Of a stretch of 64,000 nt of DNA, positions 38,672 through 61,532 are shown piece by piece. The DNA is taken from NCBI RefSeq assembly GCF_021869535.1, contig NW_026262690.1:15438001-15502000 (forward strand). The letters are read 5' to 3'. Made by a program: the position numbers and the translations under genes. The DNA comes from Mytilus californianus. Its lineage: Eukaryota. The notes under the pieces are model-generated. The model was given only the letters and a program-made list of their open reading frames with translations. It was not told the DNA's origin and searched no databases. Positions within the stretch are counted from its first letter, which is position 1. Each line of letters opens with the position of its first letter.

Positions 38672-39770
38672 AAATCCCAACTCGTTCGCTATGCTCGTGT
38701 CTGTAGTGACGTTTTGGATTTCAATGAGCGTAATCTATGTATTACTAGTAAATTATTAAGTAAGGGATTTCGTTACCACAAATTATTTAAAACCTTTACT
38801 AAATTCTTCCATAGGTACAAAGATTTGGTCTGCATGTTTGGCTGTACCTGTAGAAAACTTATTTCAAACGGAATAGCGCATCCTAAATTTTACGGTGATG
38901 TTGTAAACCGAGCCCAGAAATTTAGATACAATCCTGGTAAACTATCAATCCTTTAAATAAACTTATTCTTAAAGGTTACCTATTCAACACTGTAATCAAA
39001 TCTTTAAATATTATTTTTATTGGTATAAATATTGATTTTGTTATCAGTAAATTAAAACCATACTAAATATTACACATATGTACTTTCACGGTTCTACAAT
39101 CAGTCGATACCTATATTTTGGCATTGCACAAGGTCATGTTTTTCTCTGACTGTTAATGACGTCTTTACACTAAACCCATTGGATGTTGGATGTGTACTGA
39201 TTGTCATTTTAGTCTTAGATACATGATTTATTTTATTAGTTGTTATTGGCTTTGAACAAGCTGACAATAACTGCCAGTACGCTCAGATCTGTACTTAGTA
39301 TCGTTTTGTTGTGGGGATGTATAAGTATCCGTCCACGTCCATTCTGTGTTTTTGTTAGATGCATTTTTATCTGTATCCATGTGATGAGTTAAACATTTTT
39401 GGACTGATTTTTATAGTTATTGTTCTTATGTTGTACTGTTACACACCGGTCCCAGGTTAGGGGGAGGGTTGAGCGCTCACAAACATGTTTAGCCCCGCCA
39501 CATTCTTTATGTGCCTGTCCCAAATCAGGAGCCTGTAGTTCAGTGGTTGTCGTCGGTTCATGTCTGCCATTTTTGTGTTTCGTAAATTGTTTTGTTATAA
39601 ATTAGGCCGTTAGTTTTCTCAATTGAATTGTTTCATATTTTTCATGTCGGGGCCTTTTATAGCCGACCATACGGTATGGGTTTTTCTCATTGTTGAAGGC
39701 CGTACGGTTGCCTATAACTGCTTACATCCACTTGATTTGAACTTGGGTGGATAGTTGTCTCATTATTATT
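38672..39770 (+). mobile_element. Penelope-like retroelement 3' fragment followed by the window's most abundant repeat
   Basis: SQLVRYARVCSDVLDFNERNLCITSKLLSKGFRYHKL is a PLE-type RT C-terminal region. It continues into the ubiquitous ggatagttgtctcatt repeat. Confidence 0.7.
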
Positions 39771-40239: not shown

Positions 40240-40965
40240 TGATCCATGCATGAAAATGAAGTCTTGGTCAGATAAACCATGTCAGAGAGACTGTTAGACA
40301 TGTACACCTTACAATCATTCCACATTTAATATAGTAACTGAGAAATAGACTACACCCCAAACAGTAAACGTTGTCCAATGAACCATAAATATGAGATCAA
40401 GGTCAGATGAAACATGGACATGTACACCTTACAATAATTCTATACGCCAAATAAAGTTGATCTACTGCTTATAATGTTTGCGATACAGTGGTTGTCGTTG
40501 GTTCATGTCTGATATATTTGTTTTTCGTAAATTCATGTTTTGTTATAAATTAGGCCGTTAGTTTCCTCAATTGAATTATTTCGTATTTTTCATGTCGGGA
40601 CCTTTTATAGCCGACTATACAGTATTTTTTTTCTTCTCATTGTTGAAGGCCGTATAGTTGTCTATAATTGCTTACATCCACTTGATTTGAACTTGGGTGG
40701 ATAGTTGTCTCATTGGCAATCATACCACATCTCCTTATTTTTATATTAATCACGTAATTTTAACCTTGATCACTATTCCATGAAAGAGGTCGATGTAAGG
40801 TGAGCTATACCTGACGGACATGTAGACATTGCATCCAGTTCTTCTAGTTTCTGAAATATATAGCTTTATACAAAGGTTTATGCTGTCGCTGCTGCCGCCG
40901 CTGCCGCCGGATTGTAGTCCCTATGTCTCGCATTCTGCGACTTTCGTTGCAAGCGAGACAAAAGT
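40240..40965 (+). mobile_element. HINE-like element interrupted by a copy of the abundant repeat (about 40480-40745)
   Basis: aaggtca motifs, (GCC/GCT) microsatellite and terminal hairpin tgtctcgc...gcgagaca followed by an A-run. Confidence 0.55.
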
Positions 40966-41084
40966 TATCTGAAACGTATTGTTACACAAATGAAGCTGCT
41001 ATATACCTCTGAATTTTAATAAAGATTGTAAAACCTTTTGAAAATGTCCTTTTCGTAAATTAAGTAATAGTAAATTATGTTCAA

Positions 41085-41891
41085 TCAATAGTTTAGATTA
41101 AGATTTCCAAACAAAGAAGTAAGTTCGTCCTTTCTTTCTGTTGGTCTTAGTTTCTTTTTCCATAATTTTCCTCCTAGATCCGCCTCATTATAGATTCGTT
41201 TTCCACTTCGAATATCAAACAGATGTTCAAATAGCTCTTCTTCCTCATGGATTATATCTTTTATCTTTACATCTACATCCAAATCATCTTCAATAAGGCC
41301 AAGTTTCTCAGCTTTCTTTAGAATCCATAACTTAGAAAGATTTCTGAGGACATAATACCTTGAATCTTCGTCTTTGTCCTCAGGCAAATATTGAACAACA
41401 GGAAGTGCTGGAACATCTGATATATCTGCACCCCCCTTTAATAAGGTATCTAATTCATACCCGGGAGAACCACGAATAATTTTCCTTGAATATCGAAGTT
41501 GTGATAGACATACACATTTTTTCTTGACTGTATTCATTTTGTGCAGATTTTTTTTCCAGTATGTACCCCCAGGATCACCACGAACTTCAACAAATTTTCC
41601 TCTGCATTCAGTTGTAAACTTTCGTTCTTCGATGTCATCAGTCTCTTCTACTTCAATCACATCGCACTTCCCAAACTGTTCTGCTTTTCTGAAAACCCAG
41701 AGTCGTCTGTTATCCAATGTGTACCAACGGGATCCTTTACGACAAACTTTTATAGTTCTTATATCATCAACATCCAGTTCATCTTCTAATATTTCATCAA
41801 GAGTTTCACCAATTTGATCTCCGTTAAAGAAGATTGGTCTGATAGAACTCTGACAATATCGAATTTCCGAAGGCTTCAACTCATCCACCAT
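41085..41891 (-). CDS. Uncharacterised 268-aa protein with two tandem ParB/sulfiredoxin-like domains; uninterrupted CDS
   Basis: 807-nt ORF with an in-frame TAA just upstream of the ATG (context AAAATGG) and ATTAAA about 65 nt after the stop. Domain 1: LKPSEIRYCQSSI..F..G..IGETLDEI......IRTIKV.....WYTLDNRRLWVF. Domain 2 aligns to it (LSQLRYSRKII...VPALPVV...YYVLRNLSKLWILKKAEKLG...GGKLWKK). The ORF is well supported; the fold assignment is from memory of the motif. Confidence 0.85.
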   Translation of the reverse strand: MVDELKPSEIRYCQSSIRPIFFNGDQIGETLDEILEDELDVDDIRTIKVCRKGSRWYTLDNRRLWVFRKAEQFGKCDVIEVEETDDIEERKFTTECRGKFVEVRGDPGGTYWKKNLHKMNTVKKKCVCLSQLRYSRKIIRGSPGYELDTLLKGGADISDVPALPVVQYLPEDKDEDSRYYVLRNLSKLWILKKAEKLGLIEDDLDVDVKIKDIIHEEEELFEHLFDIRSGKRIYNEADLGGKLWKKKLRPTERKDELTSLFGNLNLNY

Positions 41892-42462
41892 TTTTTAAAT
41901 CTGGAATTTTCTATTTCGTCATCCACTTCTATAGAAATGAAAATGAAAGTAAAAGTATACGGTGAGTGTATATTTCCTTGATATATTATATTATATTAAT
42001 GTTTAATGTTTATAGAAATATAATATAATATATCAAGGACAAGATGGCCTGAATTTTGACAAATAACTTATCTCGCCTAACAACCAATGATGAACAGCAT
42101 CTGAACAAAAAACATCATTTTTATGTTTTTTTTTATATATTTAATGAATTTTCCAAAAAAAAAAATTTTGGGCTACATTTCTTTTCCGATTTTATATATG
42201 GTCAATAATAATCTCAGAAGTATTCGCATGTTCTTATGGTTATTGTTAATGTAATTTTCATTTTCACGGGTTTATGATTTAATTGGAAAAGATATATATA
42301 TCCAGTAACTTGTGACGTCAAAAAGTTAAGTTCATATTTTACTTTTGAATTCGGGAAAAGTAGTATGTAAACTGTGAACACAATAGATATTTCTGAGTTT
42401 AAAAATGAGAATATCATGAATTTTGATTGGGAAATGAGTTCAAAGTATTTTAATTTTTTTTT

Positions 42463-42682
42463 ACATATTTGTATAAAATAATAGGGAAAATATTGAAAGG
42501 GAATGACTTTTGTCCAAGTACTGTACAAGGTTTATTTTGACATATTTGTATAGAATAACAGAGAAAATATTGAAAGGGAATGACTTTTGTCCAAGTACTG
42601 TACAAGGTTTATTTTGACATATTTGTATAGAATAACAGAGAAAATATTGAAAGGGAATGACTTTTGTCCAAGTACTGTACAA
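42463..42682. repeat. 77-bp tandem repeat, about 2.9 copies
   Basis: gaaaatattgaaaggg recurs at 42486, 42563 and 42640. Confidence 0.9.
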
Positions 42683-42729
42683 CATGTACAAGGGTTATGA
42701 TAAACTTCCATGCCAGCAAGTAACTTTTC

Positions 42730-45420
42730 TAATAAACATCTATTATGTCTGTAACGATAAATAACTTTACTCAAACATGAACGCTTGTCTACCAGGATTA
42801 ATAACCTTACAATAGCATGGTTACTTGTGTAGGACAATTAGTAGCCGAACATTAATAACCTTACACATAGCGTAGACTCTTGTCTAGAACGACTCATTAC
42901 CTTCGGTGCTTTGCTTTTGTGCCAATTGGCATTTCATTTGCGCAAATAATACAGGTAAATACAGGTAAATAGTATAAAAAATAGATTTCTTCAAAAGAGA
43001 CTTTTAAACACGGTTTTTGATTGCATAATAATACATATTCCTCCGAGATCAGTCATCGTAATTATATTACGAAAGCACTATACACTGCTACGTTCTTAAT
43101 AGGAGACTTTTCATAATAATGTTAAAACACAGTTCTGTTATAAATTAACGAGATCATAAAACCTATAAGAAAGCACTATACACTGGAGTAAAACCAAAAG
43201 TTTGTTCTGACACAAAGACTTGTAACCAACGGCTCGGATGTATTCATGTACACTGTATAACCTATATGCGTTGTCATAAAACATTACAGACTTATTTCCT
43301 CTATTTAAAAAATAAGAAGATGTGGTATGATTGCCAATGAGACAACTATCTACCAAAGTTCAAATGAAATGGATGAAAGCAATAATAGGTAACCGTACGG
43401 CCTTCATAAATGGGGAAAACCCATACCGTATAGTCGGTTATAAACAGCCCAGACATGAAAATAGAAACAATCCAATTGAGAAAACTAACGGCCTGTTTGT
43501 CTCAGACTTGACAATGTCCATCTTTACATCTCAAACATGTAAACACTATATAGTTTTAAACCTAAGTGACTATATCGGTTTTATATTAGAAATGAAAAAA
43601 AATCTTATTCACGATGAAACAATGAATATTTTAAACTTTTCAGTTATATGTTACCTGTAAAATGACGCAAATGAAGTTTTTATTTTTTGGCGCAAATGTT
43701 ATATAACCTTGTGGCGCAAATAAAACATTGGATTTTGTAAAAATTGACGCAAATGCAATGCGCCCATTACCTTACACATAACATGCCGGGTCGATTAATT
43801 AACCAACACGTGGCATATGTGCGTGTCTATGAGATTAACCTCGTGGCATTGACGCTTGTCTAGTACGATAAATTACACAACTCATGACATGGACGCTTGT
43901 GTAGAATCCCTGGTCTGTGGCCATTATTAACCTAACTTACGACATTGACGCTTGTCTAAAACGGCTAATGACCTAACTTATGCAAAGACCATTTGTCTAG
44001 TATGGTTAATAACTGTACGCATAGCATGGGTATTTGTCTAGGACGATACATACCATTAAGCATAGCATGGACCTTGTCTAGGACGATTAATAACCGTACG
44101 CATAGCATGTATAGTATGGTTAATAACTGTACGCATAGCATGGGTATTTGTCTAGGACGATACATACCATTAAGTATAGCATGGACCTTGTCTAGGACGA
44201 TTAATAACCGTACGCATAGCATGGGTATTTGTCTAGGATAATTATTAGTCTAACTCCTGTGATGAATGCTTGTCTAGTAAGATTAATAACTTTACACATA
44301 GCATGGACGTTTGTTTAGGACGATCAATAACCGAACCCATGGCATGGACGCTTGTGTAGAACCACAGGTTTGTGGCTATTATTAACCCAACTTACGACAT
44401 GGACGCTTGTCTAGGACGACACATAACCTTACACGTAGCATAGACACATATCTAGGACGATTAGTGACCTAACTTATGCATGGAGCTTGTCTAGGACGAT
44501 TAATAACCGTACGCATAGTATGGGTACTTGTCTAGGAGTAAGTAGCCTAACACCTAGGATGAAAGTTTATCTAGTATGATTAATAACTTTACACATAGCA
44601 AGGACGTTTGTTTATGACGATCAATAACCTAACTCATGGTACGGACGCTGGTCTACGACATTTGTATTCTAACTCATGGCATGGACGCTTGTGTAGAACC
44701 CCGGGTATATAGGGATTATAATCACCTATCTTATGACAAAGATGCTTGTATAGGACGATTAATAAACGAAATCATGGCATGGGCGCTTGTCTTGGATGAT
44801 TAACAACCGTATGCATATCATGGACGCTTGTCTTAGACAAAGAATAACCGTACGCATAGCATGGGTACTTTTCTGGGACGACAAATAACCCAACTAATGG
44901 CATGTACGCTTGTCTAGGACGATTAATAACCAGGTCGTGGCACGACTCTTGTAATCGTTCGCTTATCATAGGTGCTGGTCTATCTAACTCGTGACATGGA
45001 CGCTCGTCGAGGACGATTGATAACCTTACTCATGGCATGATCGCTCGTCTAGCCGTCTAGGACGATTAATAACTTACTCATGACATGAACGCTTGTCTAG
45101 GACGATTAATAACCGTACACATAGCAAGGGTACTTGTCTAGGACGACTAATAACCTAACTCGTACCATAGCCGCTTGTCCAGGACGATTAATTACCGAAC
45201 GCATGGCAATGGTACTTATCTAGGACAAATAACTTAACTTATGGAATGGACACATTTCAATGACGAGTTATAACCTACCGCATATCATGTACACTCATCT
45301 AGGACGATTAATAACCGTACGCATAGCATGGATACTTGTCTAGGACGACTAATAACTTATGACAAGGACTCTTGTGTAGAACTCCTGATTTATGGCGATT
45401 TATAAACTTACTAATTAACT
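42730..45420. repeat. About 42-bp minisatellite interrupted by a MITE (about 42901-43768)
   Basis: Unit cttgtctaggacgattaataaccgtacgcatagcatggacg on both sides of the insertion. Confidence 0.88.
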
Positions 45421-48374: not shown

Positions 48375-48757
48375 TCACCACAATTCCCTTATACCCATGA
48401 ACGTGTCATGACTATTTACGATATGTTGTGGATGTGAATGAACCGCATATAAAACATCCCCTTCTTTCAAAGAATATGCAGACCCTACATAATGAGCTCG
48501 CTTTCCAGCGGCACTTATCATTATACATTGGGCAGAATCGCTTTCAAGTATTGGCTGCGATTTTCCATTACTCCCTAGGAGAAAAATTTGAAGTGCTGTG
48601 CCATTGTGCATTCGATTTTCAGCCATTTCTGTGATCTGGCTATAAATAAAATACATCCTGTCTTTCATTATTGTAAATGTACCATTTGTAGGATCATAAC
48701 TTAGCGAACTATTTCCTGTTTTATTGATTTCTGTGTTTTGATTCCATCTGATACTGC
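48375..48757 (-). CDS. TNF-like ligand exon 4 (TNF homology domain)
   Basis: ggtttctttacag|..SIRWNQN...YDPTNGTFTIMKDRMYFIYSQI...YVGSAYSLKEGDVLYAV...HDTFMGIRELW*. Confidence 0.92.
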
Positions 48758-57700: not shown

Positions 57701-57957
57701 ATTTCGTCTGCAATATATTTTTCTGGCTTTATTCTATCGCATTGTTTTGTTTGGTCTGTTTTAACACACAATGAACGGTCAACATTAGGGGCAGGTATCA
57801 TATCCTTTATTGGCCCGTTTCTTAATGCAGTCCATGAAACCGAAACTGCAAAAATTGCAACTATCAACAAAATATTGAGTACTAACAACAGTAACTGAAG
57901 AATAGTCACACAATTGTCACTTCTTTCTGTTACATCCTGTTGTTTGGTTTTATCCAT
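48375..57957 (-). CDS. TNF-superfamily ligand (type II membrane protein); join(57694..57957, 57261..57294, 50496..50573, 48375..48757), 252 aa
   Basis: GT-AG exons with compatible phases (264+34+78+383=759 nt). Short cytoplasmic tail, one TM segment, stalk, then a TNF homology domain with AKHI, IRW, YFIYSQI, GDVL and TFMG motifs. Confidence 0.88.
50496..50573 (-). CDS. TNF-like ligand exon 3 (probable strand A)
   Basis: aatttccag|..AAKNAKHIDEYHGMQSDLTVPENKRI T|gtaagt; phase 1-1. AKHI resembles the AAHL strand-A motif. Confidence 0.72.
50740..51960. repeat. About 61-bp minisatellite in TNF-like intron 2
   Basis: Unit ttatccaaagtgttgtcagtaatctattatctgtggctttcgtataatgcattcagactt. Confidence 0.9.
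52158..52960 (+). mobile_element. Penelope-like retroelement fragment (degenerate RT plus 3' repeat)
   Basis: FRYEDDVLSLNNSKFGDYVERIYPIELEI, then (frameshifted) KTKLYDKRDDFSFPVVNFPFL..SNI..PAYGVYISQ. The 3' part matches the reverse-oriented copy at 28818-29222. Confidence 0.8.
54895..56096. repeat. Higher-order repeat: two blocks of (AT-rich spacer of about 165 bp plus 29-30 bp array), including a 152-bp tandem duplication
   Basis: Spacer at 54895-55060 and 55470-55640; unit ggttgtgttttacgtcaggaaccttgtcggt; 55793..55944 matches 55945..56096. Confidence 0.88.
56218..56465. mobile_element. MITE with 16-bp TIRs
   Basis: caggggtgcgttcaat / attgaacgcaaccctg (1 mismatch). Confidence 0.7.
57261..57294 (-). 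CDS. TNF-like ligand exon 2 (34 nt)
   Basis: attttccag|NMRKLQMQYMA G|gtatgt. Supplies exactly the phase 0-to-1 change required. Confidence 0.75.
57694..57957 (-). CDS. TNF-like ligand exon 1 (cytoplasmic tail, TM helix, stalk)
   Basis: ATG at 57957 (GAAAATGG). MDKTKQQ...CVTILQLLLLVLNILLIVAIFAVSVSW...EIDK|gtaagt. Confidence 0.85.
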
Positions 57958-59350: not shown

Positions 59351-61532
59351 AATGAGTACCAATGAGTACCCATCAACAAGAATTAAACAGATGTACACAC
59401 AAGGTTCAAATGTTCAAGAAATGAGTGACACGTTCAAGAAAGAGTTATTCCAAAGCATGGACAAACATATACCATCCAAAGAAATCCGCTCAAAAAACAG
59501 CCTTCCCTGGATAACACACAAAATAAGGAAGATGTTCAAAAAGAAAAGCCGATTATACCAGCAAGCTAAAAGAACAAAAAATTGGTCAAACTACAGGCAC
59601 TTCCAAAAAGAAGTCAAAAGTCAAATAAGGAAAGCCGAATGGTCATATATCAACGACACCATACTAAAGGGCATAGAAACAAACAATACCAAGCCATTCT
59701 GGAAATACATCAAATTCAGAAAAAATGACAACATTGGAGTAGCCCCATTAAAAAACAAAGGGAAACTCATCAGCGACAGCAAAGGGAAAGCTGAAATCCT
59801 AATACAACAATTCAAATCGGTCTTCACAATAGATAAATCCACATCAATACCAGACACAACAAAACATATTGAGGAATCTATACCAAACCTCATAATAACA
59901 GAAAAGGGACTAGAAAAACTGCTGAAAGATGTCAACCCATCAAAAGCTTCTGGACCAGATGGATTTCCAAACAGAATTTTGAAAGAATGTGCAAGTCAAA
60001 TTACACCAGGACTGACAGCAATCTTCCAAAAATCTATAGACACTGGAACCCTTCCACAAGACTGGCTTAACGCAAACATATCATGCGTTTTCAAAAAAGG
60101 CGATAAACATACTGCTGAAAATTACAGACCTGTATCGTTAACATCAGTACCATGTAAGATCCTGGAACATATAATATGCAGGCACATAATGAAACATCTA
60201 GAAAAGCATGATGTTTTAACATCTTTAAACCATGGTTTTAGATCCGGTTACTCATGTGAAACCCAACTACTTGTCACTATGAACGACTTCATGAAAGCAT
60301 ATGATGCCGGACTACAAACCGATATTGCCATACTAGACTTCTCAAAGGCTTTCGACACAGTACCCCATAAGAAACTACTATCAAAAATGGGCGATTATGG
60401 AATCCGTGGGCCAATAAACAACTGGCTGAATATGTTTTTGACAAACAGGAAAATGAAAGTGGTAGTGGAAGGAGAACAATCAGAAGAAGTAACGGTGGAC
60501 TCTGGAGTCCCACAAGGCACAGTCCTGGGACCGTTGCTATTCCTTTGCCATATAAAGGACCTCCCAGACGCCGACAAATCTTCAGTCAGACTTTTCGCTG
60601 ATGACTGCCTTCTTTACAGAACAGTGAAATCTCAGAAAGACCACGACATACTTCAAGAAGACCTCAAAAACCTAGAAGTATGGGCAGATAACTGGGGAAT
60701 GCGGTTCAATGCCAAAAAATGCTACATCCTAAGCATCAGAAACAAGAGCCATAAATTCTACAGTTTAAATGGACACATACTACAGCAAGTCCAGCATAAC
60801 CCGTACCTAGGCCTACAAATTTCGGAGGACCTCAAATGGACCACCCACATATCAAACGTGGCAAAGAAAGCAAATTCAACACTAGGCTTTCTAAGAAGAA
60901 ACTTGAAATACTGCCCACAAGATTGTAAAAAAACAGCTTACATCTCGCTCGTCAGATCAACGATGGAATATGGAGCCATAGTATGGGACCCCTACACGGT
61001 AACTAACATAAATAAACTTGAAAGGATACAACGTCAAGCGGCAAGATTTATCACCAGAGACTACAAGTCAAGAGAGGACGGATGTGTCTCCAAAATGCTT
61101 GCCCAACTGGAACTACAAGATCTCCAGACAAGACGAACAAGCCAGAAGTTAATATTTATGTACAAAGTGGTTGAGGGACTGGTTCCCGCTATTGAACCAG
61201 ACGAATTCCTCAAAAAAGCACGTCCGAAGAGAACCATAACTGCCAAGAAATTCGAAGAATACCACGCAACAAATATTGTGGAAAAACAAGTAAAAAATCA
61301 CTCTAAGTGTTTTGACATTCCACCAAGCAAAACACCACAATATACAAACTCATTCTTTGTAAAGACAGTGATCGCGTGGAATCAGCTAGACGACACTGTA
61401 GTGCGCGCATCAAGCGTAGAGAGCTTCAAATCTGCTCTCACGCCCCGTCAATAAATCGGCGGCGCTCTCTCAAACCGTTGTATTAAAGCCAGTATTGGTA
61501 TCGACAACGTATTCATACAGATACAGATACAG
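59351..61532 (+). mobile_element. 5'-truncated non-LTR retrotransposon (LINE, most like the CR1/L2 group) with an open reverse-transcriptase ORF
   Basis: ORF to 61454 has KASGPDG, YRPVSL, QHGF-like NHGFR, LDFSKAFDTV, GVPQGTVLGP, FADD and YLG motifs. No endonuclease domain present. 3' tail (ATACAG)3 at 61515-61532. Confidence 0.93.

What the first reader, a model, noticed from the sequence alone, without database searches (positions are those of the whole stretch)
41085..41891. Intronless gene encoding two tandem ParB/sulfiredoxin-like domains, the second apparently lacking the active-site motif: candidate innate-immune nucleotide-processing effector
Seen: an 807-nt uninterrupted ORF in an otherwise intron-rich region. 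Residues ~4-112 and ~127-246 align with each other (SEIRYCQSSI/SQLRYSRKII; WYTLDNRRLWVFRKAEQFG/YYVLRNLSKLWILKKAEKLG; GGTYWKK/GGKLWKK). Established: ParB-N/sulfiredoxin folds bind nucleotides through a GxxR-type motif, and ParB-like domains occur as toxin tips in bacterial polymorphic-toxin systems. Inference: the P..IR.sQ.SI...DNRRL pattern matches my recollection of that toxin-like family, with DNRR equivalent to the GxxR site. Domain 2 has lost it (RNLSK) and could be a pseudo-enzymatic regulatory or decoy copy. The gene lies between a C-type lectin and a TNF ligand and has an IRF-like motif upstream. An active-plus-dead ParB-like pair acting as an animal immune effector is not a system I can name.
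Basis: partly seen in the sequence, partly recalled or inferred. Interest (0 to 1): 0.78.

Follow-up and report, generated by a model that had tools for sequence, protein, structure and literature searches.

The report
Mussel gene from bacterial ParB-like toxin
This mussel gene encodes two tandem copies of a ParB/sulfiredoxin-like domain that in bacteria forms the killing tip of contact-dependent toxins; the first copy keeps the conserved motif residues, the second has lost them, and what the protein does in the animal is still untested.

Summary
An uninterrupted 268-codon ORF lies at 41085-41891 on the minus strand. Its two halves are homologous (BLASTP E 2e-9).

AlphaFold2 models are confident for both halves. 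Every leading match in three structure searches belongs to the ParB/sulfiredoxin superfamily. The sequence signature is a conserved N-terminal Ser/Thr, an invariant Gln and Asn-Arg-Arg at a helix start. This matches Tox-ParBL1, a family named by Zhang et al. 2012 and already reported in metazoans.

I found bacterial homologues at the C-terminal tips of RHS, PT-TG, PT-HINT and MafB toxins. In the four loci read, each is followed by a DUF7660 gene, a candidate immunity protein.

Domain 2 has lost Gln, Asp, both Arg and Lys. It evolves faster than domain 1 (dN/dS 0.55 against 0.20). An intact first copy followed by degenerate later copies recurs across the family.

The family is greatly expanded in bivalves, with at least 36 matches in this genome. 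It also occurs in an annelid and a tunicate. This scan found it earlier on another chromosome of the same genome (s1-318092).

The immune-effector reading is untested. The only hints are a conserved ISRE-like promoter motif and a neighbouring TNF exon.

Verdict: a real gene and a new architectural variant of a known, uncharacterised domain family.

The parts
41085..41891 (-). Complete coding sequence, 268 codons plus stop, single exon
   Evidence: An ortholog with 83% aa identity and an intact frame occurs in two other assemblies. Overall dN/dS is 0.38. The ORF DNA is single-copy in the genome.
41541..41891 (-). Domain 1 (residues 1-117): intact Tox-ParBL1-type ParB/Srx-fold domain
   Evidence: AF2 pLDDT 90.8, pTM 0.86. 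Foldseek top hits are ParB-CDP 6sdk (E 6.5e-4), ParB-CTPgS, Noc, Srx, SbnI and PadC. VIA-align top 8 are all ParB/Srx superfamily, Z 5.1-7.6. dN/dS 0.20.
41841..41873 (-). N-terminal conserved block PSEIRYCQSSI (residues 7-17), with near-invariant S8, invariant Q14 and conserved S16
   Evidence: Alignments A2 and A3. It corresponds to the conserved N-terminal [ST] of Tox-ParBL1. The equivalence of Q14 to the catalytic Gln of ParB is inference only.
41703..41714 (-). D60-N61-R62-R63: predicted phosphate-binding motif at the N-terminus of helix 61-72
   Evidence: Invariant in 32 animal domains and in 4 bacterial toxin tips. DSSP places it between strand 55-58 and helix 61-72. It matches the [NT][RT][RT] signature.
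41610..41621 (-). K91-F-T-T block; K91 is conserved between animal and bacterial members
41133..41528 (-). Domain 2 (residues 122-253): degenerate copy with the same fold
   Evidence: BLASTP to domain 1 E 2e-9. AF2 pLDDT is 78-93 over 121-220, with the same strand/helix order. VIA-align on residues 122-237 gives Z 8.8 to Atu1540 and Z about 7 to sulfiredoxins. dN/dS 0.55.
41331..41345 (-). R183-N-L-S-K187: degenerate counterpart of DNRR, with Asp and both Arg lost
41088..41132 (-). C-terminal tail (residues 254-268), predicted disordered, with no CaaX box
   Evidence: pLDDT below 50 for 252-268. Many paralogs end instead in CCTIL or CCIIL.
41934..41957 (+). GAAA-rich ISRE/IRF-like block 43-66 nt upstream of the ATG
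   Evidence: GAAANNGAAAST occurs at 41939-41950. The window has 4 such sites against 0.64 expected. The block is identical in the ortholog's upstream region. There are 3 GAAANNGAAA sites within 400 nt upstream, against a background of 0.09.
41015..41020 (-). ATTAAA, a possible polyadenylation signal 65 nt after the stop codon
   Evidence: Read directly from the sequence. Not tested.

Best explanation
This is a real, single-exon mussel gene for a cytosolic protein made of two tandem Tox-ParBL1-type domains, a divergent branch of the ParB/sulfiredoxin fold.

The domain descends from, or shares ancestry with, the C-terminal killing tips of bacterial RHS, HINT and MafB polymorphic toxins. In bacteria a small immunity-like protein (DUF7660) is encoded directly downstream.

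Inferred mechanism: domain 1 binds a nucleoside triphosphate at the N-terminus of helix 61-72 through N61-R62-R63, helped by Q14, S16 and K91. It then either hydrolyses the nucleotide or uses it to modify or cleave a target, as other members of the fold do (ParB/Noc/KorB use CTP, sulfiredoxin and the SbnI/SerK kinases use ATP).

Domain 2 keeps the fold but has lost these residues, so it is a non-catalytic partner, either regulatory or target-binding.

Shown: gene integrity, the duplication, the fold, homology to toxin tips, motif loss in domain 2, and purifying selection.

Inferred: nucleotide use, catalytic activity, and any role in defence or stress. The defence reading is suggested only by an IRF-like promoter element, the large lineage-specific expansion, and the toxin ancestry.
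For: ORF and duplication.

Ortholog and selection: an intact ortholog exists; dN/dS is 0.20 for domain 1 and 0.55 for domain 2.

Fold: AF2 pLDDT 90.8 for domain 1 and 84.4 for the full length. The 50 Foldseek PDB hits listed (of 192 at E <= 10) and the top 8 VIA-align hits are all ParB/Srx superfamily, many bound to CDP, CTPgS, ATP or ADP. Domain 2 matches separately, Z 8.8 and about 7.

Signature: S/T, then Q, then N-R-R, invariant across 32 animal domains and shared with bacterial tips. It equals the published Tox-ParBL1 signature, and metazoa are listed as hosts.

Bacterial homologues: profile-profile E 2.6e-22 to a Thermomicrobiales ORF. tblastn E 3e-18 to 4e-21 links that ORF to plasmid loci. 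The Bacillus toyonensis copy is the tip of an RHS fragment. The Haliovirga copy carries a sub-threshold PT-TG match (E 6e-4, 20.1 bits against a cut-off of 23.5). All four loci are followed by DUF7660, E 1e-24 to 1e-28.

ESM Atlas shape search: nearest non-animal clusters are PT-HINT, RHS and MafB class 3 toxins, TM 0.68-0.75 and rmsd 1.8-2.3 over about 100 residues. A ParB_N/ParBc_2 cluster scores TM 0.63.

Motif census in 202 family proteins: NRR is kept in 150 of 157 single-domain proteins and in 41 of 45 first copies, but in only 13 of 61 later copies.

Localisation: no signal peptide or TM segment (maximum KD19 0.64).

Promoter: the ISRE-like block is identical in the ortholog.
Against: No Tox-ParBL1 domain has a measured activity that I could find, so nucleotide use is extrapolated from the wider fold.

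Sequence profiles give no signal to canonical ParB (hhalign E about 0.6), to Pfam or to PDB sequences. The ParB link rests on predicted structure, and the Z scores (5-9) are in a range the tool calls middling.

This gene deviates from the family consensus YSQDS, reading YCQSS.

I obtained no transcript evidence. The contigs carrying the ortholog look genomic.

The relative placement of the two domains is not confidently predicted (pTM 0.57).

The ISRE-like motif lies in AT-rich DNA, and the whole 160-nt upstream block is about 90% conserved, so its conservation is not specific to the motif. Only 2 of 11 paralogs examined have such a site near the ATG.
Confidence: 0.6

Rival explanations
1. The protein is a non-enzymatic nucleotide-gated switch or scaffold. 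Like ParB, it uses NTP binding only to change conformation or oligomeric state and to assemble a signalling complex. Paralogs would do this at membranes through their CaaX-like tails. Domain 2 would serve as a built-in pseudo-dimer partner.
For: The best PDB matches are CTP-switch proteins: ParB, Noc, KorB and PadC. Many single-domain paralogs end in CCTIL or CCIIL. Long disordered tails in other paralogs suggest scaffolding. Tandem copies with one intact site recur.
Against: Bacterial homologues are toxin tips with dedicated downstream immunity-like genes, which argues for a damaging activity. Neither model gave a confident domain 1-domain 2 packing (pTM 0.57).
Confidence: 0.2
2. The gene has an ordinary housekeeping or redox-repair role like sulfiredoxin, unrelated to conflict or defence.
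For: Sulfiredoxins are among the structural matches, especially for domain 2 (Z about 7).
Against: The catalytic Cys motif of sulfiredoxin is absent; the equivalent position reads DNRR. The family has at least 36 divergent matches in this genome (including some with stop codons), in tandem clusters, and more than 3,000 50%-identity clusters in public data. That pattern is not typical of a housekeeping enzyme. The nearest non-animal relatives are toxins.
Confidence: 0.04
3. The ORF is non-functional: a decaying duplicate, a chance ORF, or cargo of a mobile element.
For: The gene is flanked by inverted copies of a high-copy ~260-nt interspersed repeat. Several paralogs carry stop codons. No transcript evidence was obtained.
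Against: An intact 270-aa ortholog exists at dS 0.23 with dN/dS 0.38, and 0.20 in domain 1. Every residue that is invariant in the 32-domain animal alignment is kept in domain 1. The ORF DNA itself is single-copy, and the flanking repeat is ubiquitous in the genome, with more than 10,000 first-look candidates. No transposase or RT homology was found.
Confidence: 0.06

Closest known systems
Tox-ParBL1 toxin domain of bacterial polymorphic toxins (Zhang et al. 2012, PMC3482391; type member Neisseria gonorrhoeae MafB NGK_2271)
   Same: Predicted ParB fold, a conserved N-terminal Ser/Thr, and an [NT][RT][RT] motif that is mostly N-R-R. Bacterial relatives found here sit at RHS and PT-TG tips, and structural neighbours are PT-HINT, RHS and MafB toxins. 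Metazoans were already listed among the hosts.
   Different: The mussel protein has no trafficking or pre-toxin module, no signal peptide and no adjacent immunity gene. It carries a second, degenerate copy in tandem. It belongs to a very large animal expansion with an added C-terminal PGG-x-W block not seen in the bacterial tips.
ParB / Noc / KorB / PadC N-terminal CTP-binding domain
   Same: Best solved-structure matches (Foldseek E 6.5e-4 and TM 0.51; Z 6-7). Both have an arginine pair at the start of the helix that follows the central strand pair, and a conserved Gln shortly after the first strand.
   Different: No HTH or dimerisation domains. No detectable sequence-profile similarity. Asn replaces the Glu of GERR. 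No link to DNA partition.
Sulfiredoxin (Srx)
   Same: A compact single-domain ParB/Srx fold of similar size, found in eukaryotes, and ATP-dependent. Z is about 7 to both domains.
   Different: The catalytic Cys of the GGCHR motif is absent. Zhang et al. consider the two to be independent acquisitions by eukaryotes.
Atu1540 (PDB 2hwj)
   Same: Highest Z score for either domain (7.6 for domain 1, 8.8 for domain 2).
   Different: No sequence match in Pfam, including ParBc_2, at E up to 10. Atu1540 itself has no known function.
Tandem cluster of ParB-like genes with Ser/Lys-rich repeats elsewhere in this genome (earlier scan note s1-318092)
   Same: The same head domain and the same Tox-ParBL1 assignment. 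I saw paralogs with 543-990-aa open frames and disordered repeats.
   Different: The present gene is solitary, has no repeat tail, and instead carries a degenerate second domain.

Membership tests
ParB/Srx fold superfamily | Alpha/beta core with the order strand, strand, helix, strand pair, helix, strand | tested here: met
   AF2 models. Foldseek, VIA-align wide and VIA-align second-look searches return ParB/Srx members as all leading hits for both domains.
ParB/Srx fold superfamily | Phosphate-binding motif (GxxR type) at the N-terminus of the helix after the central strand pair | tested here: met
   Domain 1 has D60-N61-R62-R63 between strand 55-58 and helix 61-72, invariant in the family. 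The positional equivalence is inferred from secondary-structure register and aligned ranges (model 2-93 against M. xanthus ParB 38-121), not from a residue-level superposition. Domain 2 does not meet this feature (RNLSK).
ParB/Srx fold superfamily | Nucleotide binding or hydrolysis | not testable with these tools
   Requires biochemistry.
Tox-ParBL1 (Zhang et al. 2012) | Conserved N-terminal Ser/Thr | tested here: met
   S8 is near-invariant in animal members. The Ser/Thr of the Q-[DES]-[ST] block (S16) is shared by the animal domain-1 sequences and all 4 bacterial tips in the alignment. Which of the two is the published residue cannot be told without the paper's alignment, which is not held.
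Tox-ParBL1 (Zhang et al. 2012) | [NT][RT][RT] motif, mostly N-R-R, equivalent to DGHHR of classical ParB toxins | tested here: met
   N61-R62-R63 in domain 1. Domain 2 fails this feature.
Tox-ParBL1 (Zhang et al. 2012) | Bacterial members are C-terminal tips of polymorphic toxins (MafB-N, RHS, HINT, LXG/WXG) | tested here: met
   RHS tip in Bacillus toyonensis p246. Sub-threshold PT-TG match in Haliovirga. Atlas structural neighbours are PT-HINT, RHS and MafB class 3 clusters.
Tox-ParBL1 (Zhang et al. 2012) | Direct homology to the type member NGK_2271 | not tested
The nearest test is the structural match to a 'MafB class 3' cluster, TM 0.68 over 98 residues.
Tox-ParBL1 (Zhang et al. 2012) | Cognate immunity protein (Imm-SUKH or Imm44) encoded next to the toxin | tested here: inconclusive
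   All four bacterial loci have DUF7660 directly downstream. Whether DUF7660 corresponds to Imm44 is unknown. No DUF7660 match was found in the mussel genome, but the control genomes also gave no match, so absence is not shown.
Sulfiredoxin | Catalytic Cys in the GGCHR motif | tested here: not met
   The equivalent position reads DNRR in domain 1 and RNLSK in domain 2.
Chromosomal/plasmid ParB CTPase clamp | GERRxRA box plus HTH DNA-binding and C-terminal dimerisation domains | tested here: not met
   No Pfam ParB_N or HTH hit at E up to 10. hhalign against a 25-sequence ParB_N profile gives E about 0.6. The protein consists only of two N-domain-like modules.

The most novel reading that the evidence does not exclude
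Marine invertebrates have turned a bacterial contact-dependent toxin tip into a large family of intracellular, IRF-inducible, NTP-dependent effectors. In the multi-domain members the catalytically dead downstream copy acts as a built-in regulator, taking over the role that the separate DUF7660 immunity protein plays in bacteria. It would hold the active domain in check until infection or stress releases it.
Probability: 0.1. Interest if true: 0.8.

Novelty: new variant of a known kind. Interest (0 to 1): 0.45.

Why it matters
Tox-ParBL1 was named in 2012, and I found no paper in the library that measures an activity for it. It is one of the bacterial toxin domains that eukaryotes have taken up repeatedly.

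This gene gives a compact natural pair, one intact domain beside one degenerate domain, on which the proposed nucleotide-dependent chemistry can be tested.

The bacterial loci found here supply a candidate immunity partner (DUF7660) for the same experiments.

If the animal proteins prove to be inducible effectors, they would add a further case of bacterial conflict machinery reused in invertebrate immunity, and would help explain the large gene-family expansions in bivalves.

If they do not, this remains a well-delimited orphan family that Pfam does not yet cover.

Tried and rejected
Sequence searches that gave nothing useful:
- Pfam scans of the whole protein and of each half found nothing at E up to 10.
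- PDB sequence searches with the protein and with the family profile gave only chance-level hits: a J-chain, a sulfotransferase and 2ewc, a conserved hypothetical protein.
- hhalign of the family profile against a ParB_N profile built from 25 Chloroflexota-side genomes gave no signal in local or global mode (E 0.6-0.9). The ParB link therefore rests on structure and on the published HHpred result.

Domain 1-domain 2 contact: complex prediction on the two domains as separate chains returned 'no answer' (ipSAE 0.00 in both runs). This is not evidence either way. The full-length AF2 pTM of 0.57 likewise leaves the inter-domain arrangement open.

Other dead ends:
- The first related-loci run failed because the alignment had no conserved stretch. 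It worked after the degenerate copies were removed.
- Transposon origin is rejected. The ORF DNA is single-copy, and only the flanking ~260-nt repeat is multi-copy.
- The contigs carrying the ortholog match the window only over the ORF plus about 160 nt upstream. They look genomic, so they give no evidence of transcription.
- Long paralogs carry no extra Pfam domain.
- The supplementary alignment of Zhang et al. is not held.
- Literature searches for DUF7660, ParB-like toxins or effectors, and bivalve polymorphic-toxin domains found no characterisation.

Full report
**Observation**

The window holds an uninterrupted 268-codon ORF at 41085-41891 on the minus strand. It is the only long ORF within several kilobases.

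Its two halves are homologous. BLASTP of residues 1-117 against 118-268 gives E 2e-9 at 28% identity. A family HMM calls two domains, at 4-116 and 125-247.

The protein has no hydrophobic segment that could serve as a signal peptide or membrane span (maximum 19-residue Kyte-Doolittle mean 0.64).

**Is it a real gene?**

A 270-aa ortholog with 83% identity and an intact frame occurs in two independent assemblies of a related mussel. Those contigs match the window only over the ORF plus about 160 nt upstream, at 88% nucleotide identity.

Nei-Gojobori estimates against that ortholog are:
- whole gene: dS 0.23, dN/dS 0.38
- domain 1: dN/dS 0.20
- domain 2: dN/dS 0.55

Both halves are therefore constrained, the second less so.

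The ORF DNA is single-copy in the 1.65-Gb genome. Only a ~260-nt interspersed repeat in the flanks is multi-copy. This removes the 'transposon ORF' refutation. I obtained no transcript evidence.

**The family**

Pfam finds nothing. The word-based protein search returns 59 relatives, all unnamed or 'uncharacterized'. They come from Mytilus species, Potamilus, Tegillarca, Mya, Dreissena and Crassostrea.

A profile of 50 domain copies scored against 1.84 billion cluster representatives finds 3,324 proteins at E <= 1e-3 and 1,112 at E <= 1e-10. Named members include further bivalves (Mactra, Pinctada, Saccostrea), the annelid Dimorphilus and the tunicate Styela.

The window's own genome has at least 36 matches, several in tandem clusters on other chromosomes. 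Some carry 543-990-aa open frames in which the head domain is followed by long disordered Ser/Lys-rich repeats with no Pfam domain. Many single-domain relatives end in CCTIL or CCIIL, a CaaX-like prenylation signal. The present gene does not.

It calls the species the California mussel, which I did not check.

**Fold**

AlphaFold2 with the 50-row alignment gives a domain 1 model with mean pLDDT 90.8 and pTM 0.86.

- Foldseek against the PDB returns ParB bound to CDP (6sdk, E 6.5e-4), ParB with CTPgS, Noc, sulfiredoxins, SbnI, PadC, KorB, Atu1540 and pNOB8 ParB. All 50 listed hits belong to the ParB/Srx superfamily.
- An independent all-against-all VIA-align search of 48,161 chains puts eight ParB/Srx members on top (Z 5.1-7.6). 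Osa and Spo0J, also ParB/Srx-type, follow at Z 3.6-3.7, and unrelated chains score below 3.
- The full-length model has pLDDT 84.4, and both domains show the same order of strands and helices.
- In the second-look alignment, domain 2 (122-237) matches Atu1540 at Z 8.8 and sulfiredoxins at Z about 7. Domain 1 matches M. xanthus ParB residues 38-121 at Z 6.8.

The Z values are individually middling. What carries the fold assignment is the exclusivity of the hit list across three searches.

**Link to bacterial toxins**

Zhang et al. 2012 (PMC3482391) defined Tox-ParBL1 as a predicted ParB-fold toxin domain with these features:
- a conserved N-terminal Ser/Thr
- an [NT][RT][RT] motif, mostly with two Arg
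- carriage on MafB-N, RHS, HINT and LXG/WXG polymorphic toxins
- presence also in several eukaryotic groups, including metazoans

The mussel family has that signature. P7, I10, Q14, D60, N61, R62, R63, L64 and W65 are invariant, and S8 is near-invariant, in 32 animal domains.

A scan of bacterial genomes with the family alignment found a 101-aa ORF in a 70%-GC Thermomicrobiales contig, next to two long ORFs that I read as respiratory-complex genes but did not scan. Its profile-profile match to the mussel family is E 2.6e-22 over 95 columns.

That ORF in turn finds plasmid loci in Sinorhizobium, Bacillus toyonensis, Streptomyces and Haliovirga (tblastn E 1e-14 to 4e-21).
- In B. toyonensis p246 the domain is the C-terminal tip of an RHS fragment, in a cassette array beside an RHS core protein and an AHH toxin.
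- In Haliovirga it follows a sub-threshold PT-TG pre-toxin match.
- In all four loci I read, the next gene starts within about 20 nt, or overlaps the toxin ORF's end by up to 19 nt, and is a DUF7660 protein (E 4e-24 to 6e-28). This layout is that of a toxin with its immunity protein.

A shape search of the ESM Atlas closes the loop. Besides mollusc, cnidarian and diatom clusters, the nearest models are PT-HINT toxins (TM 0.75), RHS toxins (TM 0.70-0.72) and 'polymorphic toxin MafB class 3' (TM 0.68). A ParB_N/ParBc_2 cluster scores TM 0.63. An alignment of animal and bacterial members shares Q14, I17, D60, N61, R62, R63, L64, K91 and G98.

**The active site and its loss in domain 2**

In the model, D60-N61-R62-R63 lies between strand 55-58 and helix 61-72. 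That is the position where ParB carries GERR and sulfiredoxin carries GGCHR. This equivalence follows from secondary-structure register and aligned ranges, not from a residue-level superposition, which the tools do not return.

By the same reasoning, Q14 may correspond to the Gln that ParB needs for CTP hydrolysis. I treat that as inference only.

Domain 2 keeps the hydrophobic core, L-W after the motif and the GG-x-W block. It has R for Q14, I for S16, R for D60, and L/S and K for the two Arg. It also lacks K91.

This is not peculiar to this gene. Among 202 family proteins in hand:
- NRR is present in 150 of 157 single-domain proteins
- NRR is present in 41 of 45 first copies of multi-domain proteins
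- NRR is present in only 13 of 61 later copies, which often read N-E-[IKLM] instead

An intact head followed by degenerate copies is thus a recurrent architecture.

**How the two domains relate**

I tested whether domain 2 packs on domain 1 as a pseudo-dimer.
- The full-length model's pTM of 0.57 shows that the relative orientation is not confidently predicted.
- The complex test on separate chains gave no answer.

The idea stays open.

**Immune context**

A GAAA-rich block at 41934-41957, 43-66 nt upstream of the ATG, contains a 12-mer fitting the ISRE-type pattern. The window has 4 such sites against 0.64 expected, and 1 shuffle in 100 reaches 4.

The block is identical in the ortholog, but the whole 160-nt upstream segment is about 90% conserved. 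The 400 nt upstream hold three GAAANNGAAA sites against a background of 0.09. Only two of eleven paralogs examined have one near the ATG.

A TNF-family exon lies 6.5 kb away.

These are hints. Gene neighbourhood carries little weight in an animal genome.

**Mechanism, with odds**

Most likely (about 0.6 for the package; about 0.85-0.9 for the identity part): a cytosolic Tox-ParBL1/ParB-Srx-fold protein whose first domain binds an NTP at the NRR helix cap and acts enzymatically, with the second domain as a non-catalytic partner.

A pure nucleotide-switch or scaffold role is the main rival (about 0.2). A sulfiredoxin-like housekeeping role (about 0.04) or a dead gene (about 0.06) is unlikely.

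A defence or stress role is plausible, about 0.3 in my estimate. It is supported only by toxin ancestry, the lineage-specific expansion and the promoter motif.

**Novelty**

I did not find the following described in the searchable literature:
- the scale of the bivalve expansion
- the recurrent intact-plus-degenerate tandem architecture
- CaaX-tailed members
- the DUF7660 partner in bacteria

I rate this a new variant of a known kind, of moderate interest.

Noticed in passing
L013:4318-4557; L016:4321-4575; L017:4297-4548; L018:4307-4558: In four bacterial loci (a Thermomicrobiales MAG, Bacillus, Sinorhizobium, Haliovirga), each Tox-ParBL1-like toxin gene is followed at once by a DUF7660 (PF24693) gene of 79-84 codons. 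DUF7660 has no assigned function and looks like the cognate immunity family.
   Followed up: partly
proteins P0013, P0017, P0019, P0020, P0024, P0030: Many single-domain paralogs from several bivalves end in CCTIL or CCIIL. This is a CaaX-like prenylation signal preceded by extra Cys, and it suggests anchoring on the cytosolic face of membranes.
   Followed up: no
protein P0102 (Mactra antiquata, 784 aa): One family member is annotated as HSP70 12A and has an Hsp70 match at residues 337-623 after the ParB-like head (E 4.9e-13). This may be a true fusion or a merged gene model.
   Followed up: no
window 40486-40750, 39541-39764 and 43308-43494: Copies of a ~260-nt interspersed repeat, with about 90% identical copies on many chromosomes, flank the gene. 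The nearest pair is in inverted orientation, 2.5 kb apart. This is probably coincidence given how abundant the repeat is.
   Followed up: partly
window 42454-42684: Three head-to-tail copies of a 77-nt unit (91-94% identity) lie about 560 nt upstream of the gene.
   Followed up: no
window 41975-42039: A perfect 23-nt inverted repeat with a 19-nt spacer lies just upstream of the conserved promoter block. It is only partly conserved in the ortholog.
   Followed up: no
window 60449-60460 and 57836-57847: Two further ISRE-type 12-mers occur in the window. The one at 60449 is identical to the one upstream of this gene.
   Followed up: no
window 48378-48668 (-): An exon encodes the C-terminal part of a TNF-homology domain (PF00229, E 6e-5, just above the curated cut-off).
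   Followed up: partly
protein P0003 (Mytilus coruscus, 184 aa): The annotated ortholog lacks the stretch from about residue 57 of domain 1 to about residue 138 of domain 2. Most likely a spurious intron was called inside a single-exon gene.
   Followed up: no
G000:C143:59.78-59.89 Mb and 71.24-71.36 Mb; G000:C154:101.73-101.97 Mb: Further tandem clusters of short (about 100-260 aa) family members, some with stop codons, lie on other chromosomes.
   Followed up: no
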